From IMG/VR virus record IMGVR_UViG_3300010938_000951, positions 186,001 to 250,000 of that record: a DNA stretch of 64,000 nucleotides. The stretch is one strand, 5' to 3'. Position numbers and translations under genes: made by a program. The notes beneath the pieces are model-generated. The model saw nothing but the letters and a program-made list of their open reading frames with translations. It had not been told where the DNA came from and did no database searches. Positions 23,490 to 62,846 of this stretch are shown here, piece by piece. Position 1 is the first letter of the stretch, and each line of letters starts with the position of its first letter.

Positions 23490-24737
23490 ATGCAAATTGA
23501 AGTAACTGAATTAGAACCATGCAGACTGTCTGTTCACTATGAGGCTAACTTCCTGGAAATCTCTGATAAGAGAGCAGAAGTTGAAAGTGCTTTTAAGAAA
23601 GCTCCTGTACCAGGATTTAGACCAGGTAAAGTACCACCTGAAGCTATTAGAGTTCATTATCGTCAACAGATTGACGACTCTCTAAAGCGCGCGCTTGCAG
23701 AAGATGCATTTCACAATACTCTTTTCGAAAAGAAAATTAGACCACATGGTGCCCCACGTTTTAATAGTTTACTATTAGACGGCGGTAAGTTTACTTGTGA
23801 CTTTGAAATTCTAACCAAGCCCGATTTTGAAGTGCCTGCTTGGAAAGATATGGAAGTCGCAAAGCCACACGGGGAAATGGAAGCGTCTGTTCTAGCCGAG
23901 AAAATGATGCAAGAGTTGCGTGTTCGTTTAGGTGAAGTATCTCCTTATACCGATACTGATTTCGTTCAATCTGGAGACAATGTCATCATTGATTATAAAG
24001 GCACCGTAGATGGTCAAGTTGTTGATAGTCTAGTGGCTGAAGGAGAGATGATTACTATTGGTAATAGCCCATTAGCCGCTTTTGATAACAACTTATTAGG
24101 TATGTCCTTAGATGAAGTCCGTGAATTTGATTTCGTGGCACCTCCACAAGGATTACCATCTTTAGCTGGTAAAACTGTTCACTTTACAGTCACATTGAAG
24201 ATGGGCTCTAAGACCGTTCCATGTGCCCTAGATGATGAAATGGCAAAAAAGATGGGTAAAAATACGTTTGAAGAATTACAGGAAACTGTATCTCAAGCAG
24301 CTTTTGCTCGTGCAGCTAATATGAATAAGATGGCAGTTCAAGAAGCAGTAGCTAGAAAACTTATTACTAGTGTTGATATTAAAGTTCCAAATTGGATGTC
24401 TTTATCTGAAGCGCAATATCTAAGCCACCAATCCCAACTAGATTGGAATGCTATGCAAGATTCAGACAGAGAGAAAATGATTGAAATGGCCGAGCAAAAT
24501 GTTAAGTTATCTTTGATTCTAGATAAGATTAGAGAATCTGAGCCGGAAGCACAGCTAACTGACCAGGAAGTGTTTGAAATTATCAAACAAAATTTGGCCA
24601 ATACCAAAGTGACGCAAAGTTTAGATGAGGTCATTCAGCAAATGAATAAGACAGGTTATCTACAAATTTTGTTCCAGCGCATTAAAGATGAAAATACTAT
24701 GGATTACATAGTAAAGTCAGTAAAGTTGATTGATTAA
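23490..24737 (+). CDS. tig: trigger factor
   Basis: Ribosome-binding loop PGFRPGKVP; FKBP segment GDNVIIDY.G..DG...FD..L.GM; C-terminal KLSLILDKI. Confidence 0.93.
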   Translation: MQIEVTELEPCRLSVHYEANFLEISDKRAEVESAFKKAPVPGFRPGKVPPEAIRVHYRQQIDDSLKRALAEDAFHNTLFEKKIRPHGAPRFNSLLLDGGKFTCDFEILTKPDFEVPAWKDMEVAKPHGEMEASVLAEKMMQELRVRLGEVSPYTDTDFVQSGDNVIIDYKGTVDGQVVDSLVAEGEMITIGNSPLAAFDNNLLGMSLDEVREFDFVAPPQGLPSLAGKTVHFTVTLKMGSKTVPCALDDEMAKKMGKNTFEELQETVSQAAFARAANMNKMAVQEAVARKLITSVDIKVPNWMSLSEAQYLSHQSQLDWNAMQDSDREKMIEMAEQNVKLSLILDKIRESEPEAQLTDQEVFEIIKQNLANTKVTQSLDEVIQQMNKTGYLQILFQRIKDENTMDYIVKSVKLID

Positions 24738-25074: not shown

Positions 25075-25352
25075 TGAAGGTCGAAAGGTTCCTAATTCAA
25101 GCATGCTGTAATAAAAAGCAGATTGTCTTTAAATTAGACAAAACTGTTGATCAAAGTTTGCTTGAAGTTCTGAAAAGTAATGGGTTCACAGAAGCTGCCC
25201 ACTTTACTAAAGCAGGAATGCTATATGCCGATAATCTGGACTTAATAGTGACGGGTCCATTTGGTGGCGATAAGCTCAATGCTAAGTGTAAAAAAGCAGA
25301 TTGTGACCAAATCCTCAATGATTTTGAGGCTTTACTTGTCAGAACGGGGTGA
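25074..25352 (+). CDS. hypothetical protein
   Basis: TAATG coupling. Confidence 0.65.
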   Translation: MKVERFLIQACCNKKQIVFKLDKTVDQSLLEVLKSNGFTEAAHFTKAGMLYADNLDLIVTGPFGGDKLNAKCKKADCDQILNDFEALLVRTG

Positions 25353-26020
25353 TAATGGCAAAGGGTAAAGGTTCTATCGCTGAAATCAGAAAGAAAGTTA
25401 CCAAAACCCACGAATTCATTTCGACTTCTTATCATGAGGCTGGACACACGGTTTTTGCGTTGTTGCACCTTATGAAAGTCAGCTCTGTGTCTGTTTTTGA
25501 AAATAAACATTTTAAAAGAGTTCATGGAATTTGTTATTATGATTATCCTAGTGATTTTGATGAAATTCAAGATCCTGATTTGTTAAATACTTTACTTAAA
25601 GCCGAAATTGGTGTTAGTTATGCTGGTTTAATTGCAGAAACTTCTTTGTTTAGAAGTATTTCTGGTTCTAAGCAGACGCCAACTTTTATCAGTTACGGTT
25701 CGGCCGATGATAATAAATCAGCCCGAGAGGTGATTAAAAAATATAATCTAGCACCTCCTGGGCCTAAAAGAACAGCTTATAAAAGAAAAATTATGAATGA
25801 AGTTCAATCTGAGCTTCATTCTCACTGGGACGCGGTAATGGTTATAGCTCATGCGCTATTTCGCCATCGCCGTTTGTCCTTTGTTGATCTTCAAGACTTG
25901 CTTACTAAAAAAACACATAATAAAAAGTTTTGGAAAGATCAATTCAAAAAGATTAGTTATTTTTACGATAATAGCCAAAACCTTGACGAAAAAGATTTAA
26001 AATCTATATTGTCAAGGTAA
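25349..26020 (+). CDS. stand-alone peptidase M41 (FtsH protease domain)-like metalloprotease
   Basis: SYHEAGH, YAGLIAE, GSADD and the terminal helices IAHAL...L...DL.DLL. Confidence 0.8.
   Translation: MIMAKGKGSIAEIRKKVTKTHEFISTSYHEAGHTVFALLHLMKVSSVSVFENKHFKRVHGICYYDYPSDFDEIQDPDLLNTLLKAEIGVSYAGLIAETSLFRSISGSKQTPTFISYGSADDNKSAREVIKKYNLAPPGPKRTAYKRKIMNEVQSELHSHWDAVMVIAHALFRHRRLSFVDLQDLLTKKTHNKKFWKDQFKKISYFYDNSQNLDEKDLKSILSR
25980..26018 (+). promoter_or_regulatory. 39-bp interrupted palindrome overlapping sigma70-like promoter TTGACG-16-TATATT
   Basis: ACCTTGAC-N5-AGATTT-A-AAATCT-N5-GTCAAGGT, about 125 nt upstream of dnaE. Confidence 0.55.
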
Positions 26021-26142
26021 TGTAAGACCCACACCGTATTCCCTGGCACAGTACACGCAGTCTATCCTTAGATTGAAAATTCCCCTGAGATTGGGTAAGA
26101 TGTACACACGTGTTACAATACACAACCATATCAGGAGGTCAT

Positions 26143-29100
26143 ATGACCGACTTTGTTTCTCTGCATAATCAGACGCAGTTTTCTATTCTTGATTCAATTA
26201 TTACACCAAAGGCCCTTTTCAAACGAGCAAAAGAGTTAGGACAAACAGCGATTGCAGTTACTGATCATGGCTCTTTAGCTGGAGCCTGGGATGCCTGGAA
26301 AGCTTCAAAAGAAACTGGTGTCAAACTTATTATTGGATGCGAGTGTTATTTTCAAGATGATGCATCTAATGTTAATGAAAAGTTCCGCCATATTGTATTG
26401 TTGGCGAAGAATGCCGTTGGATATCGTAATCTTTTGACGTTAAATAAGAAAGGTTTCGATCAGAGTTCTTTTGTAGGTAAGCGCGTTTATTCTGTACTTG
26501 ATTGGAAGTTGCTGGAGCAGCATGCTGAGGGTTTAATTTGTTTAACAGCATGTGGTAATGGTATCATCAGCCAACCTATTATGAAGGGTAAAATGGATGA
26601 AGCAGAGAAAACTCTATTGCGACTTAAAGATTTGTTCGGTGATAATTTAGGTATTGAAATTCAGCCTAACAATATGAAGCGCGGTTCAAATATTTTTAAT
26701 GATGAAATCGATCAAGATTTTTTGAACAGACAATTAGTGAAGCTTGGCAAGAAACACAATGTTCGTGTTGTGGCTGCCTGTAATGCTCATTATCTAACTA
26801 AAGAAGATGCGGATGTACATGATGCATTCCTTGCTATTGGTGCGCATCAACCAAAGCATTCTGGTTTTCGTTTAAAGTATCCTGTACCAGAATTTTATCT
26901 CAAAACTGGCGATGAAGTTAAAGAGTTTTTTGCCAGAGTGTATCGCGATGACGCACAAACATTCGTTGACAATTCTGTATATTTTGCTAATCTGTGTGAA
27001 AAGCCTGAGTGGATTGATCCAAAGTTTTCCAATCCATCTGGCAAAGAGCTTCCTGTATTTCCTGTTAAAGATGAACCAGATTATCTGGAATTCCGTGACT
27101 GGGTTATTCAGCAATCAGAAAGCATTCAAAAATTAGAGGAAGACAAGCTTTTCTTACGTTATCGTTGTATTAAACGTTTTGATTCTCGTGTAAAGAACCT
27201 TACTCCAGAGCAGCGTGAACAATATAATAAACGCATAGAAGAAGAGTTAGATGTTTTAGAGTACCACGGATTCTCCAGCTATATGCTCATTGTAGCAGAT
27301 TTTATAGAATGGGCTAGAAAAAATGAAATTGCTGTTGGTGAAGGCCGCGGCTCTGTTGGTGGTTCACTAGTAGCGTATTTGCTAGGAATCCATCAAGCAG
27401 ATCCGATTAAATATAATTTGATTTTTGCTAGATTCCACAACAAAGAGAAGTCCAGCTTCCCTGATATTGATACCGACTTTGCACCGTCTGGTCGTGAAAA
27501 AGTACAAAACTATCTACGCCAGAAATATGGTGAAGATCATGTGGCGCACGTTAGTAACGTAAATACTATTACACCAAAAGTGTATGTTAAAGACATTGCT
27601 CGTATTTTTGAATTTGGCGGCTCTAAAGAGGAGGCGTTTAAGATTGGTAATGAAATCGCTAATTGTATTCCGGCGGAAATTCATTCTATTGAGGATGCAT
27701 TGGCAAAAGTTCCGCTATTTGCGGAATACGCCAAGAAATATCCAGAGTTCGAAAGATACAAGGATATCTGTGGAAAGTACCGTGCTTGGTCCACTCACGC
27801 CGGTGGTATTATCATCTCCGCTCGTCCCCTGACTGGACTTGTTCCACTCAGAAAGGATAAGGATGGAGCACTAGCTATTGAGTATGATAAGGATAAGGCC
27901 GAAGAAAATGGTCTAGTCAAAATGGATACCTTGGGCCTTTCAACTTTAGATATTATTGGCCAAGCTATGAAGCTGATCAAAGAGTCTGGAAAGACTCTTC
28001 CGGAAGATATTAATTATGACGAGTACGATCAAAGTGCTTACGATGTAATTTCAAATGGCGACACTTTCTGTGTCTTTCAGCTTGGAACATCTGGTGGAAC
28101 TATTGATTTGTGCAAACAAATCAAGCCAAGGTCTATCAATGATATTAGTTATATTAACTCACTTGCTCGCCCATCTGCTCGCGATATGAGAAAAGATTTT
28201 ATCTTAACCAAAGATGGCAAGAAACCATTCGCACTACTACATCCTACTTTGGGTCGAGCATTTAATAATACATTTGGATTTGGTCTCTACGAAGAGTCTC
28301 TAATGTATTTAGCTCAAGATGTAGCTGGTTGGAGTTTGCACTCTGCTGACCGTTTGCGAAAACTTACGAAGGAAAAAGGTAAGAATCCCAAGAAAGCTCA
28401 AGAATGGCGCGCGGAATTTATTAAAGATGCCATTGCCAACAATGTTAATGAAAATATTGCTAAACGCATTTGGGATGAGGTCGTAGATAAATTCCAGGGT
28501 TATGGTTTTAATATGTCTCACTCTATCTTGTATTCTATGACAAGTTACAAGACAGCATACTTAAAAGCACACTACCCAATTGAATTTTTAATGGCCAACT
28601 TAATGGCTGAAGTTAAGTCTAATGCACCAGATGCAAAAGGCAATATTGAGAAAATCAAAAAGGAAATTCGTAAACGTAGAGTTAAAATTGTTCCGCCTGA
28701 TATCAATAAATCACAACTCGCTTATACTATCGAAGATGGTAACAAACTAATTACTGGGCTAGATGCTATTAAATTTGTTGGTATTGATGCCATTAAGGAT
28801 ATTATTGAGAAACGACCATTTACTAGCTTCTTTGATTTTATGTCTAGAGTTAGTTCGAAAACAGTACGTGCGAATAGTATTCAGGCTTTGGCGGCATGTG
28901 GCGCGCTTGATTCCTTCGGAATTTCTCGTAAGCTAATGTATCTGTATTGTTCAGATTACCGCAAGAAACTACAAGTGTGGCTTAAAAAGCACGATCCAAC
29001 TAAAGAAGAGTTTATTTATCCTTGGCCAGCAGAACCCAATTGGTCTATGCCGGAAATATATGCTTTAGAGCATTATTACCTTGGTGAATCATTTACTTGT

Positions 29101-29655
29101 AAACCTGCGTTAGCGTATGGTAAATTTTTTGATGGTGATGCTGTGACTGTTCAAGAAATTAAACGCATGAAAGATAAGGCCAATGTATCATCAGTGAAAG
29201 GTATTATTCGCGATTTCTTTGAATTCCGTGTTAAAAAAGAGGGCAAGTATTATGGTCAAGCCATGATCAAGGCTGTCATTGAAGACAAGAATGGCGATCA
29301 ATGTACTTTAACTATTTTCCCGGATCGTTGGAAAATCGTACAAGAACGAATTCAAGAACTTAACAAAAAAGCCGAATTCGATATAGGTATAGCATTGTTC
29401 TTCTCTGGTAACACGAATTCTTATGAAGACGACATGGGAATCATATTGGATCAATTATACCACATTGCATTACCGCCCTCTCTTCCGGCCGATCTAAAAG
29501 CTAAGAAAATAAACCTTAAAGAGGCAAAAGCTAAGCTTTTCGGAGAAGTACCCGAGGAAAAACCTAAGAGTCCTCAAGAGATACTTGATCAAATAGAGGA
29601 TACTTTATATGATGAGGGTCTTATCGACTTGGATGACGAATCTGAGGATGACTGA
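26143..29655 (+). CDS. dnaE: DNA polymerase III alpha subunit (family C)
   Basis: PHP domain (TDHG, HIVLLAKN), GRGS.GGSLVAY, PDIDTDF, STHAGG, KMD.LGL and YGFN.SH; AGGAGG SD before ATG 26143. Confidence 0.97.
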   Translation: MTDFVSLHNQTQFSILDSIITPKALFKRAKELGQTAIAVTDHGSLAGAWDAWKASKETGVKLIIGCECYFQDDASNVNEKFRHIVLLAKNAVGYRNLLTLNKKGFDQSSFVGKRVYSVLDWKLLEQHAEGLICLTACGNGIISQPIMKGKMDEAEKTLLRLKDLFGDNLGIEIQPNNMKRGSNIFNDEIDQDFLNRQLVKLGKKHNVRVVAACNAHYLTKEDADVHDAFLAIGAHQPKHSGFRLKYPVPEFYLKTGDEVKEFFARVYRDDAQTFVDNSVYFANLCEKPEWIDPKFSNPSGKELPVFPVKDEPDYLEFRDWVIQQSESIQKLEEDKLFLRYRCIKRFDSRVKNLTPEQREQYNKRIEEELDVLEYHGFSSYMLIVADFIEWARKNEIAVGEGRGSVGGSLVAYLLGIHQADPIKYNLIFARFHNKEKSSFPDIDTDFAPSGREKVQNYLRQKYGEDHVAHVSNVNTITPKVYVKDIARIFEFGGSKEEAFKIGNEIANCIPAEIHSIEDALAKVPLFAEYAKKYPEFERYKDICGKYRAWSTHAGGIIISARPLTGLVPLRKDKDGALAIEYDKDKAEENGLVKMDTLGLSTLDIIGQAMKLIKESGKTLPEDINYDEYDQSAYDVISNGDTFCVFQLGTSGGTIDLCKQIKPRSINDISYINSLARPSARDMRKDFILTKDGKKPFALLHPTLGRAFNNTFGFGLYEESLMYLAQDVAGWSLHSADRLRKLTKEKGKNPKKAQEWRAEFIKDAIANNVNENIAKRIWDEVVDKFQGYGFNMSHSILYSMTSYKTAYLKAHYPIEFLMANLMAEVKSNAPDAKGNIEKIKKEIRKRRVKIVPPDINKSQLAYTIEDGNKLITGLDAIKFVGIDAIKDIIEKRPFTSFFDFMSRVSSKTVRANSIQALAACGALDSFGISRKLMYLYCSDYRKKLQVWLKKHDPTKEEFIYPWPAEPNWSMPEIYALEHYYLGESFTCKPALAYGKFFDGDAVTVQEIKRMKDKANVSSVKGIIRDFFEFRVKKEGKYYGQAMIKAVIEDKNGDQCTLTIFPDRWKIVQERIQELNKKAEFDIGIALFFSGNTNSYEDDMGIILDQLYHIALPPSLPADLKAKKINLKEAKAKLFGEVPEEKPKSPQEILDQIEDTLYDEGLIDLDDESEDD

Positions 29656-30704: not shown

Positions 30705-31724
30705 ATGCAATTACCTAATCGTTTATCTCAGTTGTTACAGAAACAAACTGATAGATTATTAAAAGACCTATTGTCTGAGAATCCTGATGTTCTTAAGAGT
30801 TATGTTAATGGTGGTCTTGCTGCCGTCGGTGCAGTATTAGCGCCAATTAATGTGTTTATGAGGCATTTATTAACAGTTCAGGGACTAGATCCTGATGCTG
30901 TGCCAGGAGAGAAACAAAGGGCATTGATACGGGCAGCTTTCAATAGTACATTTGAAAATAATCACGAAAAAGATTATGATGATGATTATGATGTTTCTTG
31001 GGTTCATAAAAAGTATAATTCTATAAAAGACAAATTCAATGTCACAGAAGATAAGTTTATGGCCCTAACTGATTTGTCAAAATTAGATAATGCCCCTCCA
31101 GTTTTGACAAAAGTAAAATTTGATGAGCTGGTTCAAGATATTAATCCAGTAGCTCCCGAGTCTGAGAAGCGCGAATTGCCTTTAGTTAAAACATATATGC
31201 AAGATGAAATTCAGGCGCTTAAAGAATTTGTGGAGACTATGGATAAACACAGCCAAAAGGCTGGAATTAAAACATCTACTAAAAAAGCCAATAAGGGTAA
31301 GAGGCCAGGCGCTAGAGTTCGTAGGGTAACCAGCTCTACAACCATCAAAGATGAACCAACAACATTAGAAGTGAAGTCTGATCGTGTTGTGCGACCATCA
31401 TCTAAGAAATTGCCAGCTCGTAATTTGAAAGATTTAACCGCACAAAAGAAAGAGAAAGTTAAAGCTATTAAAGAAGCAACCCCTGAATTTCAAGCAGAAT
31501 TAAAAGCAAAATTAGCAAAAGCAACAGAACTAACTAGTCTTATGATAGAAAAGGGACTTTGCAGAGCAGATGATCAATCTCGTAAAGATCAAATTGAATC
31601 AATGTTGTCTTGGACAGATAATAATTTTGATGCACTAGAAAGAGTAATTAACAAATATTCTCCTACTAAAGATGCAGTGGCTGAGAATAAATTCAAGGGC
31701 TCTTTTAGAAGAGTTCAGAAATAA
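30705..31724 (+). CDS. hypothetical protein with a C-terminal domain paralogous to the scaffold C-terminus
   Basis: 20/52 gapless identity with aa 1134-1185 of the 59151 protein. Confidence 0.8.
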   Translation: MQLPNRLSQLLQKQTDRLLKDLLSENPDVLKSYVNGGLAAVGAVLAPINVFMRHLLTVQGLDPDAVPGEKQRALIRAAFNSTFENNHEKDYDDDYDVSWVHKKYNSIKDKFNVTEDKFMALTDLSKLDNAPPVLTKVKFDELVQDINPVAPESEKRELPLVKTYMQDEIQALKEFVETMDKHSQKAGIKTSTKKANKGKRPGARVRRVTSSTTIKDEPTTLEVKSDRVVRPSSKKLPARNLKDLTAQKKEKVKAIKEATPEFQAELKAKLAKATELTSLMIEKGLCRADDQSRKDQIESMLSWTDNNFDALERVINKYSPTKDAVAENKFKGSFRRVQK

Positions 31725-31731
31725 GGTACAA

Positions 31732-32187
31732 ATGCCAATTAGACGTGTTCAACAACAATCAGACAGAGGAAGTATTCGTGATTTGCAAAATGGAGATGAC
31801 GAAAAGTATCCTCCAACTGACTACGAATTACGCGTAAAAGAATTGTATGAACACGCTTTGGTTACTAAAAATCAAGCCTTAGTTGACTCCCTGGGCTTGA
31901 TTCCAATTAATGGTTCTGCTAATGATCCAGTTTCTATTTTTAGACACCGTGAATATATAAAGTCTCTTAGTTCAGAACTGGCGGATAAAATACAACAGAC
32001 AGCTAAAGAGATTGAAGGTTGTTTACATGTGGATGAAACGTCTTTGCCACAAGAAGTTAAGTGGTCTAGATATAAACAGGCTCATTCTTTGGCGGCTATT
32101 TGTGAGGATATTGATATAGTTAAAGTGGCAAGTGCTGATGGTGGTACTTATACTAGAGCGAAAAGAAGTTTTAGAAGGGTAATCTAA
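31732..32187 (+). CDS. hypothetical protein
   Basis: AAGGT SD before ATG 31732; ends KRSFRRVI. Confidence 0.7.
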   Translation: MPIRRVQQQSDRGSIRDLQNGDDEKYPPTDYELRVKELYEHALVTKNQALVDSLGLIPINGSANDPVSIFRHREYIKSLSSELADKIQQTAKEIEGCLHVDETSLPQEVKWSRYKQAHSLAAICEDIDIVKVASADGGTYTRAKRSFRRVI

Positions 32188-33020
32188 TGAAGTGTGTATC
32201 CTGCGAAACAGAAATTAATCCAAAATGGAAGCATGCGATAGACATAAATGTGTGTCCATTCTGTGGTAAACATATCATGGAAGAGCATCTTAAAAATTGT
32301 CTAACTACTTTGGCTGCTGCCATGGATGCTATGTTAAAATATCCTGAGCAGTTAGATGATTGGCTATTGTCAAATCATAATTATATCAAAACGGATTCTC
32401 CTAATCTGAAACAGTTTCTTCCCAAAGAGGCTTTTAAAGAAATTCGTAAAGAGCTTGATGAGCAAGAGTTTCAGGAAAAGAAAAAATCTATCGTCAAAAT
32501 TAAAGTACCTACTGACGACGGTGATATTGTGGAACAAGAAGTGGTTGTCGAGAAGATGGTTACTGATGACAGGACTCAAACATTCCATGATCGCGCAAAC
32601 AATATGTTGAAGCAAGAGAAAGCCGTGGATGGTGACCCTAAAAGTGTCGCCGCAAAAACTAGGGATCTTAAAGCGATGGCAGAAAAAATCAAGCGAGAAG
32701 TTGCCGCGCAAGCGGAAGGTGGTATGGCACCTATGATCAGCAAAGAGATGATGGCCGAAGCAGATCCAGAAGCTGTACGAGAATTTCAGTCCATGATTGC
32801 TTCTGGTGATATAGTGTCTTCAAGTTTGCCTGCTGCCGCTGATGGTGATGATGACGATATTCCAGATGTTGTATTGGCTATGGCTAATATGAAAAAATCT
32901 GGATCTAAAGATGGTGGGGCTAACGAAAAAGATTTACATGCATTAGCAAAAATGCAAGCTAAAGCGCAGGGAGCTTCTAAACGATTGGGTTCTGGTAAAG
33001 GAAGTTTTTCAAGGGGATAA
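32187..33020 (+). CDS. hypothetical protein with N-terminal zinc ribbon
   Basis: CVSC and CPFC; ends KGSFSRG. Confidence 0.75.
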   Translation: MKCVSCETEINPKWKHAIDINVCPFCGKHIMEEHLKNCLTTLAAAMDAMLKYPEQLDDWLLSNHNYIKTDSPNLKQFLPKEAFKEIRKELDEQEFQEKKKSIVKIKVPTDDGDIVEQEVVVEKMVTDDRTQTFHDRANNMLKQEKAVDGDPKSVAAKTRDLKAMAEKIKREVAAQAEGGMAPMISKEMMAEADPEAVREFQSMIASGDIVSSSLPAAADGDDDDIPDVVLAMANMKKSGSKDGGANEKDLHALAKMQAKAQGASKRLGSGKGSFSRG

Positions 33021-33904: not shown

Positions 33905-35104
33905 ATGTCAGATGATAAGAAAAAGAAAGCCGATAAGCTAACCGCATTTTTCCGAAGTTTCGCAGATGCAGACGCTCAGCTAGACGTTAGACTTGCCCAT
34001 GAAACCGTGGGAGAAAAGTTGCCAGTCATTTCGACGGGCTCATTAGCTCTTGATGATGCACTTTCATCCGGTGGATTGCCAAAAGGTAGATTAATTCAAT
34101 ATTATGGCGCTCCTGGTAGCGGTAAAACTTTGATGACCATGTTGGCAATCAAAGAAGCACAACTTCAAGATCCAACATCTCAACAAATGTTTATTGATGC
34201 TGAAGGTACTTTTGATGCCAAATGGGCAGAGACTTTAGGGTTAGATTCATCTAGAATTATTGTTGTTGACGGTGAAACGGCTGTTATTGGTCGTAACTGT
34301 TTTGAGATGATTCTTGGCGTTCCAAAAGAAGACAAAAAGACTCATGAGCTAGTCGGCAAATCGAAACAAGGCTTGCTCGATATGATTATGGCAGGAGAGT
34401 TTAATATCAATATGGTTGTATTAGACTCACTTGGTGCCATTATTCCACCAGGCGAAGATGTTTCGGTTGTTGGAAAGATGAATATGGCCTTATTGGCAAG
34501 GTTCTTAACTACTACTTTCCGTAAGCTTTCTCTTGATGCAAATAGAGCGCAAGTGCCATTTATTTTCATCAATCACAAGAAAGCTAATATGGATCCTTAT
34601 GGTGTGGACCATTCGTTCTCTGGCGGAAATACTTATGCTCACTTCTTGAGCGCTAACGTTTACTTTGAAGCGGTAGCACGTGCAGATGCACAAATCTTGG
34701 ATGAAAAAGAGCAAAAGGTCGGACATACGATGCGTGCAACCATTGAAAAATCGAAGTTTGGCCCTTACCCACGTAAGTGCGAATTCAAAGTTAACTTCGG
34801 AATCGGCGTTATAGATAAGCACGAAGAAATCGCACAATTAGCTGTTGATTACAATGTAATTGTAAAGACCTCTACTGTAACCCATGAATATGGCGATCAG
34901 AAATGGGTCGGATTCAACAAAGTGTGTGAAGCTATTAAAGACAATCCTGCATTAGCTGAGGAGTTGGTTGTTAAAATTGGCCAAGCTCGTGAAGCAAAGT
35001 GGGATGCAGCCCGCAAGGAACAAGAGGCAAAAAAAGCCAGTGTAACTGCCAGTGATGATGCTGGTCTTGAAGTAGAATCAAAAAAGAGTAAGAAAGGTAA
35101 GTAA
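33905..35104 (+). CDS. recA: RecA recombinase
   Basis: ISTGSLALD..L..GGLPKGR, YGAPGSGKT, FIDAE, VLDSL and KSKFG. Confidence 0.95.
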   Translation: MSDDKKKKADKLTAFFRSFADADAQLDVRLAHETVGEKLPVISTGSLALDDALSSGGLPKGRLIQYYGAPGSGKTLMTMLAIKEAQLQDPTSQQMFIDAEGTFDAKWAETLGLDSSRIIVVDGETAVIGRNCFEMILGVPKEDKKTHELVGKSKQGLLDMIMAGEFNINMVVLDSLGAIIPPGEDVSVVGKMNMALLARFLTTTFRKLSLDANRAQVPFIFINHKKANMDPYGVDHSFSGGNTYAHFLSANVYFEAVARADAQILDEKEQKVGHTMRATIEKSKFGPYPRKCEFKVNFGIGVIDKHEEIAQLAVDYNVIVKTSTVTHEYGDQKWVGFNKVCEAIKDNPALAEELVVKIGQAREAKWDAARKEQEAKKASVTASDDAGLEVESKKSKKGK

Positions 35105-35807: not shown

Positions 35808-35892
35808 TGTGATAGAGCTACGATCGATTGTTTTGTTAAGTAGATAAACGTACTAGAAAAGTACAAAGAAGAAATAACATTTGGAGATCAAA

Positions 35893-36612
35893 ATGAGTAC
35901 ATTCGGTGAAGTATCTTGGAATGATGATGTGTTCCCAGGCGATAACAAGAAGCAAACAAACAGCAAAGACCTCTTTCTTCGTTTAGATGAGGGTCCGAAC
36001 GAAATCCGTATTCTGACCCAGCCACACCAGTACTTGGTACACAAGTACAAGAAAGAAGGTGACAACGGTTTCGGACAGAAAGTTCAGTGCTCCGCAATCC
36101 ACGGAAGCTGCCCTCTCTGTGCGGATGGCGATAAGGCCAAGCCACGTTGGTTGTTAGGTGTCATTAGTCGTAAGACTAACACCTACAAGATTTTGGATAT
36201 CTCTTTCGCTGTGTTTTCACAGATTAGAAAGTATAACAAGAATCCAAGATTTGGTGATCCAACCAAATATGACATCAACATTGAAGTTGATAAGAACGGT
36301 GGTGCCACTGGATATTACAGTGTTCAAGCCTTACCAAAGGAACCACTATCAGCCGCTGACCAAGTAATTAAGGACAGCATTGATTTTGATGACCTGAAGC
36401 GCAGAGTCACTCCTCCTACCCCTGAAAAAGTTCAGGCTAGATTGGACAAGATCAATGGTGTAACGACCAACGGTGCACCAGCTCCTTCCGCATCGGCCCC
36501 AGCCGCTGCTAAGAAAAGCACCAAGGCTGCCGCTCCAGCCGTCAGCATGACTGATGATGAGGAACTAGATAAGTCCTTTCCTAACTATGAAGGTGACGAA
36601 GCTCAGTCCTAA
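35893..36612 (+). CDS. single-stranded DNA-binding protein, T4 gp32-like
   Basis: FLRL..G.N.IRIL, H..C..CPLC zinc site, GDP..YDI.I and an acidic C-tail; GGAG SD before ATG 35893. Confidence 0.8.
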   Translation: MSTFGEVSWNDDVFPGDNKKQTNSKDLFLRLDEGPNEIRILTQPHQYLVHKYKKEGDNGFGQKVQCSAIHGSCPLCADGDKAKPRWLLGVISRKTNTYKILDISFAVFSQIRKYNKNPRFGDPTKYDINIEVDKNGGATGYYSVQALPKEPLSAADQVIKDSIDFDDLKRRVTPPTPEKVQARLDKINGVTTNGAPAPSASAPAAAKKSTKAAAPAVSMTDDEELDKSFPNYEGDEAQS

Positions 36613-36635: not shown

Positions 36636-36675
36636 AAAGGCCCATAACCTATTTGGTTATGGGCCTTTCTGTTTT
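36636..36675 (+). terminator. intrinsic terminator after ssb
   Basis: AAAGGCCCATAACC-tattt-GGTTATGGGCCTTT (14-bp perfect stem) followed by a T-rich run. Confidence 0.85.
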
Positions 36676-36694: not shown

Positions 36695-37267
36695 ATGGTT
36701 AAAACGGTCTTAGGATTCGACGCATCGAGTACGACTATTGGTTATTCTATATTAAGTTGGGACGAAACAACAAATAATATAGCCTTTGTCAAAGCCGGCT
36801 ACATTAAACCAAAGAAGACAGGATCTATTATTGAAAGAATAGTAGATACTAGAAATCAGGTTCAAAAAGTTATTGTTGATGCTAAACCTGATTATATTTC
36901 AATTGAAGAGATTATTCAATTTATGAAAGGCAAAAGCACAGCAAAAACTATTATTATGTTGACTACATTTAATAGGATGATTTGTTTAACGGCTTATGAT
37001 TATCTTGGTAAAGAACCTACTCTTTATAGTGTTATGACTATTCGTCATGGATTAAAGACCACCAAAGATTTACCAAAAAAAGAAGATATGCCGGCCCTTG
37101 TCGCCCAACATTTAGGAATTACGTTTCCCTACGAGTATAATAAGAAGGGCGGCATTAAAATCGAAAGCTATGACAAAGCTGACGGTGTTGCAGTGGCCCT
37201 TTATCACGCATTGGCCTTATCGGGCAAGGTGAAATCTAAAGGAAAGTCTAAAGGCAAGAAGAAATGA
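36695..37267 (+). CDS. ruvC: RuvC-like Holliday junction resolvase
   Basis: VLGFDASS..GY, ISIEE and DKADG.AVA. Confidence 0.85.
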   Translation: MVKTVLGFDASSTTIGYSILSWDETTNNIAFVKAGYIKPKKTGSIIERIVDTRNQVQKVIVDAKPDYISIEEIIQFMKGKSTAKTIIMLTTFNRMICLTAYDYLGKEPTLYSVMTIRHGLKTTKDLPKKEDMPALVAQHLGITFPYEYNKKGGIKIESYDKADGVAVALYHALALSGKVKSKGKSKGKKK

Positions 37268-38193
37268 ATTTAAAGGAAGCCTACGCAATTTTAGAATTGT
37301 CTCCCGGTGCCACGCCAGAGGAAGTCAAGAAGAAGTACCGAGAACTTACTAAAAAATATCACCCTGACATAAATAAAGAGCCGGGAGCAGAAGAGAAGTT
37401 CAAGAAAATTAATGAAGCTCATGAAGTTGTCAAGACTGGTAAAAGTACTGATTTACAGGATCGTATGCCAAGACAGGGAGGGTTTCATCGTCAACAGCAA
37501 TTCATTCAATTAGAAAATGTTGAAATGTTTACAACTATTTCTTTCAAGGAATCTGTTTTAGGTTGTAAGAAAGAGATTAAATATGATCGTCAAACCAAAT
37601 GCCAAAATTGTAATGGTCAAGGTGAAATAAGACTCCATAATGGCTGCAAAAAATGTGGTGGGCGAGGGCAGATTACTACTCGGCAAGGAAATATGATAGT
37701 TATGACCACTTGTGATGAGTGTTATGGTCGTTCTAATGTATCAACCTGTGATGTATGTAGTGGTAATGGTACCGTCCAGGCGCACGCATCTGTGCACGTG
37801 TCTATACCTGCGGGTATTGTAAATGGCAATACATTGCGATTGCAGGGTATGGGAAATTTTGCCGGCTCTTTTATGGGTCTAGCTGATCAATATACAGATG
37901 CATTTTTGCATGTAGCAGTTACTCCAGAGCCTGGATTATCTTTAGATGGGCAAAATGTAATAAGTACGCTTACTATTTCGTTATTAGATGCATTGCGTGG
38001 CTGTAAACGTATGGTGAAAACCATTCATGGTGAAAAAGAAATTCAAATTAAACCGCAATCCAGAAATCATGATGAGGTAATTATTCCTCATCATGGGGTA
38101 AATAATATGGGTAATCAAAAGGTTATTTTGGATGTAGAATACCCTAAGAATACTGATAAATTGATTAGTGTTCTATTAGATGAGGTAGTATAA
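37264..38193 (+). CDS. dnaJ: DnaJ (type I-like: J domain, four Cys repeats, C-terminal domain; G/F region short)
   Basis: YHPD, CQNCNGQG, CKKCGGRG, CDEC and CDVCSGNG. Confidence 0.93.
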   Translation: MNLKEAYAILELSPGATPEEVKKKYRELTKKYHPDINKEPGAEEKFKKINEAHEVVKTGKSTDLQDRMPRQGGFHRQQQFIQLENVEMFTTISFKESVLGCKKEIKYDRQTKCQNCNGQGEIRLHNGCKKCGGRGQITTRQGNMIVMTTCDECYGRSNVSTCDVCSGNGTVQAHASVHVSIPAGIVNGNTLRLQGMGNFAGSFMGLADQYTDAFLHVAVTPEPGLSLDGQNVISTLTISLLDALRGCKRMVKTIHGEKEIQIKPQSRNHDEVIIPHHGVNNMGNQKVILDVEYPKNTDKLISVLLDEVV

Positions 38194-50091: not shown

Positions 50092-50117
50092 GGGTATATT
50101 TCAGAATATATCCATGA
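50088..50117. promoter_or_regulatory. palindrome TCATGGGTATATT-tcag-AATATATCCATGA containing both divergent start codons; candidate bidirectional promoter
   Basis: 13-bp arms with one mismatch; G(A/G)TATAT lies 14 nt before each ATG. Confidence 0.7.
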
Positions 50118-59150: not shown

Positions 59151-62100
59151 ATGACCATTATTAAATTAGGCGAAGCTCACGAGATTAAATTGGAAAGCAT
59201 GGAATCATGTCTTCCAGAATTGAGTGCTGATGTCTTAGAGAACTTTAGGAAATTTGCTGCTAATCTAAAGAAGATTGCACCTAAAGCAGAAGACTTTCTT
59301 TATTTTTCTGCTGTCATGATGCATGCCGCAGAAGCATCTGCATTAAACGAAGATGGTACACCAAAATTAACACTTAAAGGTGAGCCAGTACAAGTTGGAT
59401 GGGATACTAGCGGAGGCACATGGAAGTGGATTAGCAATGATCCAAGTATTCGACCATATAAAAATTCTAATGGCGATATATTTCCAGAAGCCGAATTAAC
59501 CAAAGCTTATAAAAAATGGAAGCACAAGCCTCTTTGCGTGGATCATAAATCAAGTTCAGTAGACCACGTTAGAGGCTTTATTGTTGATACTTATTATGAT
59601 CGCAATCTCAAGAGAGTAATTGCATTATGTGCCTTAGATAAGGCCGGATTCCCTCAATTAGCCAGACAAGTAGCTACTGGCGTTTCAACTTGCGTATCAA
59701 TGGGTACAGCAGTTGGTAGGGCAATTTGCTACGATTGTGGTAGAGTCGCTCGTGCAGAGCAGGACTTCTGCAATCATATGAAAAACAAGACTTGCTACGG
59801 CGAAATCAACGTAGACCTTAATCCAATTGAGTTGTCTATCGTTGTAAATGGTGCTGATCCTAGAGCCAACATCAAAAACATCATCGCCGCAGCTAACACC
59901 ATGAATACGTACCTTGAAAATCGTGCTAAGGAACTAGAAAAACTTGCCGATCTCAAGTTTCATGCTACTATTGGTGTAGATGACCCACAAGGTCATGAGG
60001 GTGGCGGTTCTGCAACTTTCAATGTTCAAGCAAATGACATTGACAAGTTCAAAACTGATTTAGATGAAGCATTTAGGAAAGTTCAAGAGTTTAAAAACGT
60101 AAAAATTTCTGAACTAGATACTAATTCTTCAGCATCTAATCAATCGTCGGGTTCGATTGCCATGGATGAAGGCGCACCCACGGATTCTGGATTGGCTCTC
60201 CAAACTCCGCAAACTAACAGGTTTGCATCCGCAGATGTAGAGGCGGAATCATTGGCTGAGCTTCAGCAAGTTACTGCATCAATTGAAGCAACGTTAAGTC
60301 AAATGAAAAAGAGCTTGGATAAGTTAGCTAAAACTACTTCTACAAAAACACAAGAGGAAAATATGTCTGGATCAAAAGAAATTAATAAGCAAGCTTATTT
60401 CCAGGGCGGCGGTGGCGTAAATGAGCCAACTCCAGGTCAAGTTAAGTATCCAAAAGACGGACTCAATGAGCAGCTTCGTGAGAACGAGGATAAGCACATG
60501 GTGGGTCAGCCTCCTTTCCCTGAGGTAGGTCCAGTCGATGGTATGCACCCTTCACCAGCTTCGGCTGATCCTTCTGGGGAGTTAGAGCGTAAGAAGATGC
60601 TCGCTCGTGCAGAAGCAGAAGAGCGTGCTCTTAAGCGTAATGCCATTGTAAATATGGTTAAGGATACACTAAAGAACAAAGAAGCCTACTGGCAAGGTGG
60701 TGGCGGTGTTAACGAGCCAACTCCAGGTAAGGCAAAGTATCCAAAGGATAAACTAAACGAAGAACTTCGTGATTACGAAGATAAGCAGATGGTTGGTCAA
60801 CCACCATTCCCTGGCGTTGGTCCAGTTGATGGTTTGCATCCATCTCCATCTTCAGCAGATCCAAAAGACGAATTAAAGCGCAAGCAAATGCTCGCACGCG
60901 CACAACTACGTGCAAGATTCGTTAAGGCTGCAAATAATGATGGAACTCAAAACAAAGCAAAGAGCGCTTGGGAAGTATTCCTAGGTGATAAGCTATTGTT
61001 AACTGCTTCTGTTGATGAACTATCCGGAGGCAATACTGCAGTTCTATATGATTCAATTGCAACCAAAGAATTTGGTACTAAGTTAATTGAAAAAGTTAAG
61101 GTACAAGGCGCTGATGCTGTATCTAAACTAATCAAGAAGGCACAAGGCGCTCCTCCAGCTCCTCCTCCAGGTGACCCATCTAGCGCAGCTCCTCCAGCCG
61201 ATCCAGGCGCAGGCGCTCCAGATGCTGGTCCTCCAGCAGAAGATACGGGTGGTTCTGGCGATCCAAAGCAAACTGCCGTCGAACTTTCTGAAAAAGTAAG
61301 AGACCTAAGCTCTGATCTAGTCGAAGCTGTTCGTGCTTTAACTGGCGAACAAGCTGAGATGGGTGGTCCAGAAGCTGGTGGTGTTGGTGGTCCTGCTGGT
61401 GGTCCAATGGCCGCTGATGACCAAGATGCTCGTAAGAAGAAGGATGACAAAGAATCTACCGCTTCTGATAGCTTCAGTGCTAATACTCTTAACACTTTAA
61501 GAAAAGAACTTAATGGCGCACTAACTCATGCCATGAAAGAATCTATTGCGGAACTTGCTGAGCACAAGCAAGAACTAGATATGATTGCTGGTATGTATGA
61601 CAAGGGTGCTGTAACTCCATCTAACCAGGAGTTTGTGGGTACTATCGTAGAAGATGCATTAAATGAAGCTAAAACTGCCGTAGCAGATGGTTTCAAACTA
61701 ATGACAGCTTTTGTTAAGTATGCTCGTGGTACTAAGGCCATTGTCAAGCGTGCTGAAATTGAATCAGAATTGCAAGCACTAGCCGAAGGAGATACCGAAA
61801 TGAGCGACAAAGAAGATAGTCACTCCGCAGACGGCGGTGACTTGATGGGACTAATTAACGACACCAATGCAGATTTGGATGCCGTTCAAGAGATGATGGG
61901 TGATGACCAAAGCCACGAAGGCAGTTTAGATGAACTTCTAGACGAACCAGTAGGCGAAGAATCACTAGGAGGTCTTGAAGGAGAGGATCTACTAACAGGT
62001 TTGGCTGACGATAACGACCTTACTTTCGAACAAGGTGAGAAAGTTCCACCAGAGTTGGCCGGAAAGAAGTTAACTATGGCATCTTATGATGATAGAGCTG

Positions 62101-62846
62101 GTCGTGCAGCCCTCAGAGCCAAGTTGGCCGCTGATGCTCTCGGCAAGGAAGAGGATGGAGAAGTCCAAGATATGTCTAAACAAAAGTTTAGTGATATGTT
62201 AGACGCTTCTCAGAAGCACACTGATGGTCAAACTGAGTTGGATGTTAAACCATCTGATAGTCTTGGATTAGTTGAAACTGTTCAAGAAGTAAACAAGGCC
62301 ATGATGGATGTTGCTAAGGCTCCACCAAAGGTTCGTAAAGAAGCAGAAGTTATTCAGAGACTTGTTTCTGAAGGTAAGCTTGATCCAAAGGACGTAGATG
62401 CTCTAGCATCCTACGGATTAGATGGCGAAGCAGTTGCTTACTGGAAGAAGTATTATGGTGAAGTTGATGGCGGAAGTGAATTTGCTAGTGAATTGGTAAA
62501 GGAACACGTCAAGTCAGCAATGGAAGAAGAGCTTAACAAGTTCCGCGTCAAGTTAGCTCGCGCATACGAACTTACCTATGACATGGTTGATCGTGGACTA
62601 TGCCGTCATGACAGAGCAACTATCTCTGATCAAGTTGACCAAATTATGAAGTTTAATGATGATGCATTCGAATCTCTAAAGAAGGTTGTTGCCCGTCATG
62701 AACCAGGTGCCCTCCGCAAGGCAGCAGGTACCATTCCACAAGTTGGTCTTAGAGTTGATGGAGAATTCTCTCCAGCTCAAGCAGTAGAGGATGACTCTTA
62801 CGCCCAGTTGTCAGCCCTCTTTGGTAACAAAAAGGGTGTGTTCTAA
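59151..62846 (+). CDS. prohead maturation protease (HK97/assemblin-fold) fused to a long scaffold
   Basis: KPLCVDH..RGFIVD, VSMG, CYDC..CNH insertion and ELSIV..GADP.A; followed by acidic/helical repeats and a hydrophobic C-terminal tail. Confidence 0.82.
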   Translation: MTIIKLGEAHEIKLESMESCLPELSADVLENFRKFAANLKKIAPKAEDFLYFSAVMMHAAEASALNEDGTPKLTLKGEPVQVGWDTSGGTWKWISNDPSIRPYKNSNGDIFPEAELTKAYKKWKHKPLCVDHKSSSVDHVRGFIVDTYYDRNLKRVIALCALDKAGFPQLARQVATGVSTCVSMGTAVGRAICYDCGRVARAEQDFCNHMKNKTCYGEINVDLNPIELSIVVNGADPRANIKNIIAAANTMNTYLENRAKELEKLADLKFHATIGVDDPQGHEGGGSATFNVQANDIDKFKTDLDEAFRKVQEFKNVKISELDTNSSASNQSSGSIAMDEGAPTDSGLALQTPQTNRFASADVEAESLAELQQVTASIEATLSQMKKSLDKLAKTTSTKTQEENMSGSKEINKQAYFQGGGGVNEPTPGQVKYPKDGLNEQLRENEDKHMVGQPPFPEVGPVDGMHPSPASADPSGELERKKMLARAEAEERALKRNAIVNMVKDTLKNKEAYWQGGGGVNEPTPGKAKYPKDKLNEELRDYEDKQMVGQPPFPGVGPVDGLHPSPSSADPKDELKRKQMLARAQLRARFVKAANNDGTQNKAKSAWEVFLGDKLLLTASVDELSGGNTAVLYDSIATKEFGTKLIEKVKVQGADAVSKLIKKAQGAPPAPPPGDPSSAAPPADPGAGAPDAGPPAEDTGGSGDPKQTAVELSEKVRDLSSDLVEAVRALTGEQAEMGGPEAGGVGGPAGGPMAADDQDARKKKDDKESTASDSFSANTLNTLRKELNGALTHAMKESIAELAEHKQELDMIAGMYDKGAVTPSNQEFVGTIVEDALNEAKTAVADGFKLMTAFVKYARGTKAIVKRAEIESELQALAEGDTEMSDKEDSHSADGGDLMGLINDTNADLDAVQEMMGDDQSHEGSLDELLDEPVGEESLGGLEGEDLLTGLADDNDLTFEQGEKVPPELAGKKLTMASYDDRAGRAALRAKLAADALGKEEDGEVQDMSKQKFSDMLDASQKHTDGQTELDVKPSDSLGLVETVQEVNKAMMDVAKAPPKVRKEAEVIQRLVSEGKLDPKDVDALASYGLDGEAVAYWKKYYGEVDGGSEFASELVKEHVKSAMEEELNKFRVKLARAYELTYDMVDRGLCRHDRATISDQVDQIMKFNDDAFESLKKVVARHEPGALRKAAGTIPQVGLRVDGEFSPAQAVEDDSYAQLSALFGNKKGVF
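60384..60902 (+). repeat. two ~76-aa coding repeats with 97-aa (291-nt) period in the scaffold
   Basis: NK(Q/E)AY(F/W)QGGGGVNEPTPG..KYPKD.LNE.LR..EDK.MVGQPPFP.VGPVDG.HPSP.SADP..EL.RK.MLARA. Confidence 0.95.

What the first reader, a model, noticed from the sequence alone, without database searches (positions are those of the whole stretch)
31509..31664. A copy of the scaffold C-terminal domain in a gene of the replication region
Seen: KLAKATELTSLMIEKGLCRADDQSRKDQIESMLSWTDNNFDALERVINKYSP (31509-31664) aligns without gaps to KLARAYELTYDMVDRGLCRHDRATISDQVDQIMKFNDDAFESLKKVVARHEP of the protease/scaffold (62550-62705), 20/52 identical. The paralog lacks the K-x-A site and the hydrophobic YAQLSALF tail that follow in the scaffold, and has a long basic linker before the domain. 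Inference: a scaffold mimic that co-polymerises with the core to load cargo, couple replication to assembly, or delay or resize head assembly.
Basis: partly seen in the sequence, partly recalled or inferred. Interest (0 to 1): 0.75.

Follow-up and report, generated by a model that had tools for sequence, protein, structure and literature searches.

The report
Scaffold module copied into replication-operon protein
A roughly 60-residue helical module from the tail end of a huge soil phage's head protease-scaffold protein really has a second copy in a fast-evolving protein of the DNA-replication operon; it may be an address tag that brings that protein to the assembling head, but this is untested.

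Summary
Residues 255-320 of the 339-aa protein (30705-31724) align without gaps to residues 1120-1185 of the 1231-aa head protease-scaffold protein (59151-62846). BLASTP gives E 7e-12 and profile-profile comparison gives 99.3% probability, E 4e-20. The module ('B') occurs twice in this genome and twice in a complete 481-kb relative.

The carrier is not a scaffold paralogue. It is the local member of a modular family: a helical N-domain, a basic linker and a near-C-terminal GxFRR motif. The family holds a fixed place between DNA polymerase III alpha and RecA in a clade of 400-500-kb soil phages. About a quarter of complete orthologues lack B. Its presence needs at least 4 (parsimony: 11) gains or losses. 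Some members also carry the neighbouring scaffold module 'A', in either order.

In more distant complete genomes B sits only in the scaffold protein, so it was probably copied from scaffold to this family.

The 'scaffold mimic' function is plausible but unproven. Scaffold-invariant residues that are probably exposed are not kept in the copies. B is dispensable. The gene shares a terminator-free stretch with the replication genes. The complex prediction gave no verdict.

I judge a procapsid docking or cargo tag the most likely role (about 0.4).

The parts
30705..31724 (+). Gene of the 339-aa modular protein (the finding's carrier). It is a member of an unannotated family with 269 representatives at E<=1e-3.
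   Evidence: ORF; homologues; no Pfam, PHROG or NCBIfam family.
30705..31094 (+). Conserved all-helical N-domain (res 1-130), the family's defining part.
   Evidence: Alignments A1 and A3. AF2 model has pLDDT 90. No structural relative: Foldseek E>6, VIA Z<=5.
31095..31253 (+). Variable region (res 131-183) holding a short conserved motif, VAPExxKRExPL, with E157 invariant.
31254..31466 (+). Basic, low-confidence linker (res 184-254; 22 K+R against 6 D+E) holding the conserved motifs KKxxNKG and (K/R)VxRV.
31467..31664 (+). Module B (res 255-320): compact helical domain, homologous to scaffold res 1120-1185.
   Evidence: AF2 pLDDT is 84-91 for helices 260-282, 290-300 and 305-318.
31692..31715 (+). 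Near-C-terminal motif F-K-G-S-F-R-R-V (G332, F334 and R336 invariant in the close family).
   Evidence: The motif starts 5-14 residues from the C-terminus in nearly all members.
31732..32187 (+). Next gene (151 aa). It starts M-P-I-R-R-V and ends K-R-S-F-R-R-V-I, so it shares the SFxR tail.
32187..33020 (+). Next gene (277 aa, N-terminal zinc-ribbon-like CxxC...CxxC). It ends G-K-G-S-F-S-R-G, a tail conserved even in distant relatives.
26110..29655 (+). DNA polymerase III alpha gene, upstream anchor of the conserved operon.
   Evidence: Pfam families on the orthologues.
33905..35104 (+). RecA-like recombinase gene, downstream anchor of the operon.
   Evidence: PF00154, E 1.5e-32.
36636..36668 (+). 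The only strong intrinsic-terminator-like hairpin (14-bp stem) between 25000 and 37000, just after the SSB gene (35881-36612).
59151..62846 (+). Gene of the 1231-aa head-maturation protease fused to a long scaffold-like body.
   Evidence: PHROG 18299, E 1e-11, res 105-213. 36% identical to phage G gp19 over res 34-236. More than 370 homologues on contigs up to 511 kb.
62319..62480 (+). Scaffold module A (res 1057-1110). It is absent from the window's paralogue but present in 14 family members and in a 149-aa protein at G000 81571-82020.
62508..62705 (+). Scaffold module B (res 1120-1185), the original of the copy.
62706..62843 (+). Scaffold tail: invariant RKxAGxxPQVG, a variable stretch, then invariant QLSxxF-G-x-K-K-G-(V/S)-F at the very end.

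Best explanation
Shown: the 339-aa protein is the local orthologue of a fast-evolving, modular family that is a fixed member of the PolIII-alpha to RecA operon in a clade of roughly 400-500-kb soil phages. It consists of a helical N-domain, a disordered basic linker studded with short motifs, and a GxFRR motif near the C-terminus. In this lineage the family has taken up module B, a compact helical unit of about 60 residues. B is otherwise the penultimate conserved module of the head protease-scaffold protein. Distant complete genomes have B only in that scaffold protein, so the direction of copying was most likely scaffold to family.

Inferred: B works as a portable docking (address) module. 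It brings the N-domain and basic linker to the place where the scaffold's own C-terminal end docks, the inside of the assembling prohead (shell or core). The protein would then be loaded as internal or ejected cargo, or held at the head during assembly. This is the natural counterpart of engineered P22 cargo fusions, which have cargo at the N-terminus and a scaffold fragment at the C-terminus. It is not a competitive inhibitor of the scaffold.
For: Homology of B is firm. There are exactly two copies in this genome and two in a complete relative, G005. B is single and sits only in the scaffold protein in the complete genomes G001-G004. The scaffold region is under strong constraint: A is 72-85% and B 66-95% identical across the clade. 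The target, by contrast, is the fastest-evolving gene of its operon: 49% identity where PolIII-alpha, RecA and SSB keep 83-89%. Even so, B keeps a scaffold-like consensus in very distant members, with E down to 2e-20 against the scaffold HMM. A second scaffold module, A, appears in 14 family members, in either order relative to B, and in a third protein of this genome (53% identity over 43 residues, E 6e-10). So the scaffold's C-terminal modules behave as portable units. The architecture, with cargo domain, linker and a C-terminal scaffold piece, is the one that suffices for encapsidation in P22 (PMC9962691). Sharing a scaffold C-terminus is how SaPI1 CpmB reaches the 80alpha capsid protein (PMC5644958). 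A packaged, basic, DNA-binding ejection protein has a precedent in 80alpha gp44 (PMC7290940).
Against: No proteomic or binding data exist. That the scaffold's C-terminal region docks on the capsid is assumed from other phages, not shown here. B is facultative: 33 of 115 complete orthologues lack it, with at least 4 and by parsimony 11 gains or losses. In three contigs of one close relative it is cut off by a frameshift. The residues invariant in scaffold B, which by their polar or aromatic nature are probably exposed (Y1139, E1140, Y1143, D1144, K1177, A1181), are kept in only 0-25% of the copies. The gene lies in a stretch with no strong intrinsic terminator from PolIII-alpha to SSB, which suggests replication-phase rather than late expression. 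The complex prediction gave no verdict.
Confidence: 0.4

Rival explanations
1. B (and A) are generic, mobile helical folding or self-association modules that huge phages reuse in unrelated proteins. The copy in the replication-operon protein has no functional link to head assembly. It may, for example, dimerise the protein or bind a replication partner.
For: B is gained and lost freely among orthologues. It occurs as three tandem copies in an unrelated protein in another context (P0316). The modules shuffle in order. The copies conserve mostly hydrophobic, probably core positions plus one Gln, not the scaffold-specific polar and aromatic residues. The operon context is replication.
Against: The modules have been seen only in this phage clade, and at most two or three times per genome. 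One of those copies is always the scaffold C-terminus. Two different neighbouring scaffold modules were recruited into the same family. That is hard to explain without a shared use.
Confidence: 0.3
2. The protein is a physical coupler. The N-domain, basic linker and GxFRR motif hold replicating or recombining DNA, or a replication hub shared with the two downstream proteins. B (and A) hold the prohead, portal or scaffold, so that newly made DNA is handed on to packaging.
For: The position between PolIII-alpha and RecA is fixed. Three consecutive genes share a conserved SFxR tail, which points to a common partner. The protein has an adaptor-like string of short motifs. Links between recombination and packaging proteins are known in T4 (endonuclease VII with the portal; this is my own knowledge, not checked here).
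Against: No partner of the tail motif was identified. In the complete genome G005 the tail occurs on only four or five unannotated proteins. B is dispensable. No expression or binding data exist.
Confidence: 0.15
3. The protein is a competitive scaffold mimic that occupies scaffold sites on the capsid protein to delay, limit or resize head assembly (CpmB-like).
For: Homology to a scaffold C-terminal module. The CpmB precedent. The end of the tail, K-G-S-F, resembles the scaffold's terminal K-K-G-V/S-F.
Against: It is encoded by the phage itself as a conserved operon member, not by a satellite. The scaffold's invariant terminal motifs (QLSxxF, RKxAG) are missing and the scaffold-specific residues of B are not kept. 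B is absent from about a quarter of complete orthologues with no sign of a different scaffold.
Confidence: 0.08
4. The similarity is a chance or compositional match between two helical segments.
For: The segments are short and helical. One 18-residue helix also resembles the PPR consensus.
Against: Pairwise E is 7e-12, profile-profile E 4e-20, the alignment is ungapped over 58-66 residues, and the signal recurs across about 100 family members.
Confidence: 0.01

Closest known systems
Staphylococcal phage 80alpha scaffolding protein and SaPI1 CpmB (PMC5644958)
   Same: A second protein shares sequence with the scaffold's C-terminal end, and that shared end is what contacts the capsid protein. 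This is the clearest precedent for a scaffold C-terminus being reused by another protein.
   Different: CpmB is encoded by a satellite and shares the terminal 16-residue helix-and-hook (RIIK), which it uses to compete with the scaffold. Here the gene belongs to the phage's own replication operon. The shared part is an internal folded module of about 60 residues, not the scaffold's terminal motif. The scaffold-specific residues are not kept.
Engineered P22 cargo fusions to truncated scaffolding protein (residues 141-303 or 238-303; PMC9962691)
   Same: The layout is the same: a cargo domain at the N-terminus and a scaffold C-terminal fragment at the C-terminus. In P22 this layout is sufficient for loading into procapsids in vivo.
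   Different: That system is man-made. The P22 fragment includes the proven coat-binding helix-turn-helix. There is no sequence or fold match between that domain and module B.
Protease-scaffold fusion proteins (P2 gpO, lambda C/Nu3, herpesvirus UL26/UL26.5); my own knowledge, not checked here
   Same: The 1231-aa protein has an N-terminal head-maturation protease and a long C-terminal body with a conserved end, and it lies in the head module between portal and capsid genes.
   Different: In those systems the second, protease-free product is a nested in-frame product of the same gene. Here the second carrier of the module is a separate gene 27 kb away with an unrelated N-domain.
T4 capsid-targeting sequences on internal proteins, and long propeptides of giant-phage head proteins (PMC5694885)
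   Same: The idea is the same: a short portable part addresses otherwise unrelated proteins to the prohead core.
   Different: Those tags are N-terminal propeptides removed by the prohead protease. Here the candidate tag is a C-terminal folded module. No cleavage site could be inferred.
80alpha gp44 ejection protein (PMC7290940)
   Same: It is a helical N-terminal part joined to a basic DNA-binding C-terminal part, packaged in low copy and needed after injection. This is a possible model for what a loaded N-domain and basic-linker protein could do.
   Different: No sequence relation. gp44 is encoded between the portal and scaffold genes, not in a replication operon.

Membership tests
CpmB-type scaffold C-terminal mimic | Detectable homology between the second protein and the scaffold's C-terminal region | tested here: met
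   BLASTP E 7e-12 over 66 residues; hhalign 99.3%, E 4.4e-20.
CpmB-type scaffold C-terminal mimic | The scaffold's terminal capsid-contact motif and its conserved contact residues are retained | tested here: not met
   The scaffold-invariant QLSxxF and RKxAGxxPQVG motifs are absent from the paralogue. Scaffold-invariant Y1139, E1140, Y1143, D1144 and K1177 are kept in only 0-25% of copies. Only a loose N-K-x-K-G-S/V-F resemblance remains at the end.
CpmB-type scaffold C-terminal mimic | Encoded by a satellite or parasite that redirects the helper's assembly | tested here: not met
   The gene is a positional orthologue in the phage's own PolIII-alpha to RecA operon in every relative examined.
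CpmB-type scaffold C-terminal mimic | Binds the capsid protein at the scaffold's site | not testable with these tools
   The one complex job (scaffold C-terminus against paralogue C-terminus) gave no verdict. Capsid protein was not tried.
Protease-scaffold fusion protein (for 59151-62846) | N-terminal head-maturation protease domain | tested here: met
   PHROG 18299, E 1e-11. tblastn hits to phage G gp19 and to annotated head-maturation proteases of phiRSL1 and BcepSaruman.
Protease-scaffold fusion protein (for 59151-62846) | Lies in the head module between portal and major capsid protein | tested here: met
   Terminase 49946-51991 and portal 52069-53943 lie upstream. The major head protein lies about 10 kb downstream at G000 259031-260044.
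Protease-scaffold fusion protein (for 59151-62846) | The C-terminal region docks on the capsid protein and is released by cleavage | not testable with these tools
   Only conservation is seen: invariant RKxAG and a terminal motif.
T4-type capsid-targeting-sequence proteins | Short N-terminal propeptide that targets the protein to the core and is removed | tested here: not met
   The N-terminus is a conserved folded helical domain (pLDDT 90). The shared module is C-terminal.
PPR/TPR-like helical repeat | A single repeat matches significantly and repeats are arrayed | tested here: not met
   Each PPR unit gives only 7.3 bits (independent E about 42) over 18 residues. The high total score comes from ten identical designer repeats. 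No Pfam PPR or TPR hit.
Clamp- or hub-binding C-terminal peptide (for the GxFRR / SFxR tail) | A known consensus and a cognate hub encoded or available | tested here: inconclusive
   No beta-clamp N-domain (PF00712) is found in the 62%-complete record. The motif matches no consensus I know. Its partner is unknown.

The most novel reading that the evidence does not exclude
Huge soil phages of this clade have a natural, modular address-tag system. The two small helical modules (A and B) at the C-terminal end of the protease-scaffold protein act as portable prohead-docking tags. They have been grafted repeatedly onto non-structural proteins: a DNA-associated adaptor in the replication operon, a 149-aa protein next to an EF-Ts homologue, and a triple-B protein in another phage. 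The grafts either load these proteins as ejected cargo or tie replicated DNA to the assembling head.
Probability: 0.2. Interest if true: 0.8.

Novelty: new variant of a known kind. Interest (0 to 1): 0.5.

Why it matters
How giant phages get dozens of non-structural proteins into their heads is poorly understood. For T4 the answer is a short N-terminal tag. For phiKZ-like phages long propeptides are suspected, and no scaffold has been confirmed (PMC5694885). If modules A and B are docking tags, this uncultivated clade would show a third solution: folded C-terminal modules borrowed from the scaffold itself. That would give a sequence-based way to predict head cargo in metagenomic huge phages. 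It would also provide a compact natural tag for loading proteins into large capsids. If the modules are only generic helical units, the finding still defines two new domain families and a conserved, fast-evolving three-gene cluster with a shared terminal peptide in the replication operon.

Tried and rejected
1. Complex prediction of the scaffold C-terminus (192 aa, alignment A2) with the paralogue C-terminus (100 aa, alignment A4) scored 0.01 and gave no verdict. It counts neither for nor against binding.

2. Fold searches found nothing specific. The full model against PDB (Foldseek) gave nothing with E<2.8. The N-domain model (pLDDT 90) against PDB, AFDB clusters and the VIA wide search matched only generic long helices, Z<=5. 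For module B the VIA wide best was Z 5.9; the matches were KIX, the MntR and RecA C-terminal domains and similar, all within the noise for helical bundles.

3. Sequence libraries gave nothing. Pfam, PHROGs and NCBIfam have no family for the target, its tail-sharing neighbours, or module B taken alone. PDB sequence searches gave nothing, apart from inflated hits to designer PPR proteins that rest on one 18-residue helix. The ESM Atlas returned only viral hypotheticals and scores below 0.9.

4. The isolated-phage collection has no relative of the target. Only the protease domain of the scaffold protein finds relatives there.

5. Modules A and B are not detectably related to each other.

6. I tried to identify a hub for the GxFRR/SFxR tail. 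No beta-clamp domain is present in the partial genome. A frame-blind DNA pattern search was uninformative. A full ORF scan of the complete relative G005 found the tail on only four or five unannotated proteins.

7. No RNA run holding the gene was listed, so expression timing could not be read.

8. I considered the idea that the scaffold's QLSxxF is a beta-clamp motif. I dropped it as an untested look-alike.

Full report
OBSERVATION. The first lies near the C-terminus of a 339-aa ORF (30705-31724, + strand). The second lies near the C-terminus of a 1231-aa ORF (59151-62846, + strand). BLASTP extends the ungapped match to 66 residues (res 255-320 against 1120-1185), with 35% identity and E 7e-12. 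The window is bases 186001-250000 of a 266.9-kb viral record estimated to be 62% complete. In that record the 52-mer finds only these two places. Comparing a profile of 29 paralogue C-termini with a profile of 16 scaffold C-termini gives 99.3% probability, E 4.4e-20 over 58 columns. The shared domain, here called module B, is therefore real homology.

THE TWO CARRIERS. The N-terminal part of the 1231-aa protein matches head-maturation proteases. It hits PHROG 18299 at E 1e-11. It is 36% identical to phage G gp19 over res 34-236, and it matches annotated proteases of phiRSL1 and BcepSaruman. The gene lies downstream of the large terminase (49946-51991) and portal (52069-53943), and about 10 kb upstream of the major head protein (G000 259031-260044; PHROG 2522, E 3e-81). 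The remainder has no family assignment. It holds a 92-residue tandem repeat, P/G/A-rich and acidic stretches, and a conserved C-terminal region. 'Scaffold' is thus an inference from architecture. The protein has more than 370 homologues on contigs up to 511 kb. Its last 192 residues are 64-95% identical across them, and the whole protein is strongly conserved. The C-terminal region reads: module A (res 1057-1110), a linker, module B (1120-1185), an invariant RKxAGxxPQVG, a variable stretch, and an invariant QLSxxF-G-x-K-K-G-(V/S)-F at the very end.

The 339-aa protein has no Pfam, PHROG or NCBIfam family. It has 69 close homologues, and a profile search finds 269 cluster representatives. Its layout is as follows:
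- a conserved N-domain (res 1-130);
- a variable part with a VAPExxKRExPL motif;
- a basic linker (res 184-254; 22 K+R against 6 D+E) with KKxxNKG and (K/R)VxRV motifs;
- module B;
- a tail ending F-K-G-S-F-R-R-V-x-K.

AF2 models B as a compact helical unit (pLDDT 84-91) and the linker as disordered. With a 149-sequence alignment the N-domain is modelled at pLDDT 90 as all-helical. Neither part has a recognisable structural relative.

THE FAMILY IS AN OPERON FIXTURE THAT GAINS AND LOSES B. In every relative examined the gene holds the same place. The order is: trigger factor, an M41-like peptidase domain, DNA polymerase III alpha, a 312-316-aa protein with an HTH-like N-terminus and a basic RKRGRK end, the family member, a ~140-aa protein, a ~285-aa zinc-ribbon protein, a ~100-aa protein, a 169-aa protein, RecA, SSB, RuvC, DnaJ and primase.

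Short members of 202 and 237 aa, which have the N-domain, linker and tail but no B, are positional orthologues. In a 394-kb genome the orthologue is only 163 aa, with neither B nor the tail motif. HMMs of the scaffold modules, run against 208 family sequences, find B in about 103 and A in 14. The architectures are N-B-tail (76), N-tail (33), N-A-B-tail (4), N-B-A-tail (3), N-B-tail-A (2) and N-A-tail (2). On a tree of the N-domain (115 complete sequences) the presence of B needs 11 changes by parsimony, and at least 4 are forced by well-supported branches.

Among complete IMG/VR genomes, a close relative (G005, 481 kb) has B exactly twice, in the same two genes. Three more distant genomes (433-448 kb) and a fourth (394 kb) have B once, in the protease-scaffold ORF only. 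The simplest reading is that B, and separately A, are ancestral in the scaffold protein and were copied into the operon family. A is not detectably related to B. A also has a second copy in this genome, at the N-terminus of a 149-aa protein (G000 81571-82020) that follows an EF-Ts homologue: 53% identity over 43 residues, E 6e-10. Another phage encodes a protein made of three tandem B modules without the N-domain.

WHAT BEARS ON FUNCTION. In favour of a link to head assembly:
- The modules have been seen only in this clade, and one copy is always the conserved C-terminal end of the head protease-scaffold protein.
- Two different neighbouring scaffold modules were recruited into the same family.
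- B keeps a scaffold-like consensus even in members whose other parts have diverged beyond recognition, although the target is the fastest-evolving gene of its operon. It is 49% identical to the L005 orthologue, where PolIII-alpha, RecA, SSB and the 169-aa protein keep 83-95%. Against L010 it keeps 17%, where the others keep 42-74%.
- The layout, with cargo at the N-terminus and a scaffold piece at the C-terminus, is the one that suffices for encapsidation in P22 (PMC9962691). Sharing a scaffold C-terminus is how CpmB reaches the 80alpha capsid protein (PMC5644958).

Against, or limiting:
- B is dispensable among orthologues.
- The residues that are invariant in scaffold B and, being polar or aromatic, are probably exposed (Y1139, E1140, Y1143, D1144, K1177, A1181) are kept in only 0-25% of the copies. 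The positions kept are mostly hydrophobic, plus one Gln. So the copy has the fold but not obviously the scaffold's interaction surface.
- The scaffold's terminal motifs are absent from the paralogue.
- The gene lies in a stretch from PolIII-alpha to SSB that shows no strong intrinsic terminator before 36636-36668. This suggests co-expression with replication genes. No RNA data could be found.
- The one complex prediction allowed gave no verdict.

THE TAIL MOTIF. The G-x-F-R-R motif starts 5-14 residues from the C-terminus in almost all family members, with or without B. The products of the next two genes end in (R/P)-S-F-(R/W)-R-V and G-(K)-G-S-F-S-R-(G/S). These tails are conserved in distant relatives. 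A fourth protein (G000 92370-93320) has K-Q-G-S-F-R-R-V 11 residues from its end. In the complete genome G005 the tail is confined to these four proteins plus possibly a 68-aa ORF. Short family members ending K-K-G-V-F-R-R-V match the scaffold's last five residues, K-K-G-V-F. However, the core shared with the neighbours (F-x-R) lies beyond the scaffold's end, so a link between this motif and the scaffold is weak. The partner of the motif is unknown.

CONCLUSION. The carrier is better described as a modular adaptor of the replication/recombination operon that has borrowed a scaffold C-terminal module than as a scaffold paralogue. I rate the explanations as follows:
- B is a portable docking tag that brings the protein to the assembling prohead as cargo, or holds it there: most likely, 0.4.
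- B is a generic mobile helical module with no assembly link: 0.3.
- The protein couples replication to packaging: 0.15.
- The protein is a CpmB-like competitor of the scaffold: 0.08.

None of these can be settled without prohead proteomics or binding assays.

Noticed in passing
window 31692-31715, 32161-32184, 32994-33017; G000 92370-93320 (locus L007 4371-5321): Three consecutive genes, and a fourth gene 124 kb away, carry a conserved (G/S)-S-F-(R/S/W)-R peptide. It lies at or within about 6 residues of the C-terminus in the three neighbours and 11 residues from the end in the fourth. The 151-aa protein also starts M-P-I-R-R-V. The tails are kept in relatives whose proteins are otherwise only 17-44% identical. 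The partner is unknown.
   Followed up: partly
G000 81571-82020 (locus L132 1571-2020), outside the window: A 149-aa protein directly after an EF-Ts homologue begins with a copy of scaffold module A (53% identity over 43 residues to scaffold res 1060-1102, E 6e-10). It is a second gene in this genome that borrows a scaffold C-terminal module.
   Followed up: partly
L011 2209-2214 (also L012 and L013): In three IMG/VR contigs of one close relative the orthologue is split at a run of six C. The result is a 240-aa product (N-domain plus linker), with B and the tail in the +1 frame. It could be a real mutation, slippage or an assembly error. All three contigs are identical there.
   Followed up: partly
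window 60360-60926: The protease-scaffold protein holds a tandem repeat of about 92 residues (res 404-495 and 501-592), 70% identical, rich in G/P, with a conserved QGGGGVNEPTPG motif.
   Followed up: partly
window 62873-63559: The ORF just after the scaffold gene encodes a 228-aa, extremely charged low-complexity protein with repeated DDNDARKKKD and KKDSKKDS units. No family was found. It may be an internal head polyelectrolyte.
   Followed up: no
window 63574-63999 and beyond (G000 249574-250903): Two adjacent ORFs after the scaffold region look like paralogues. Their N-termini read F-K-Q-G-S-F-E-D-E-L and A-K-S-L-F-E-D-E-L. The first carries the K-x-G-S-F element at its N-terminus.
   Followed up: no
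window 23490-24737, 25349-26020, 37264-38193: The phage encodes a trigger factor, a 223-aa HExxH protein whose orthologue shows a faint Peptidase_M41 (FtsH-type) hit and which has no AAA domain, and a full DnaJ. All lie inside the replication operon.
   Followed up: partly
proteins P0173 and P0185; L105 1787-3040: Some homologues of the protease-scaffold protein are about 1570 aa and carry intein and homing-endonuclease Pfam domains. The PolIII-alpha ORF of genome G004 also appears to begin within an intein-like insertion.
   Followed up: no
G000 88248-97526 (locus L007): A cluster with an AAA ATPase, glycosyltransferases and NAD salvage genes (NAMPT-like, NMN adenylyltransferase/Nudix-like, NAD synthetase-like, judged by eye). 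It flanks the fourth tail-motif protein, which has a run of six histidines.
   Followed up: no
whole window: Runs that hold this sequence are mostly soil metagenomes. No tRNA genes lie in the 64-kb window. Almost all genes are on the + strand.
   Followed up: partly
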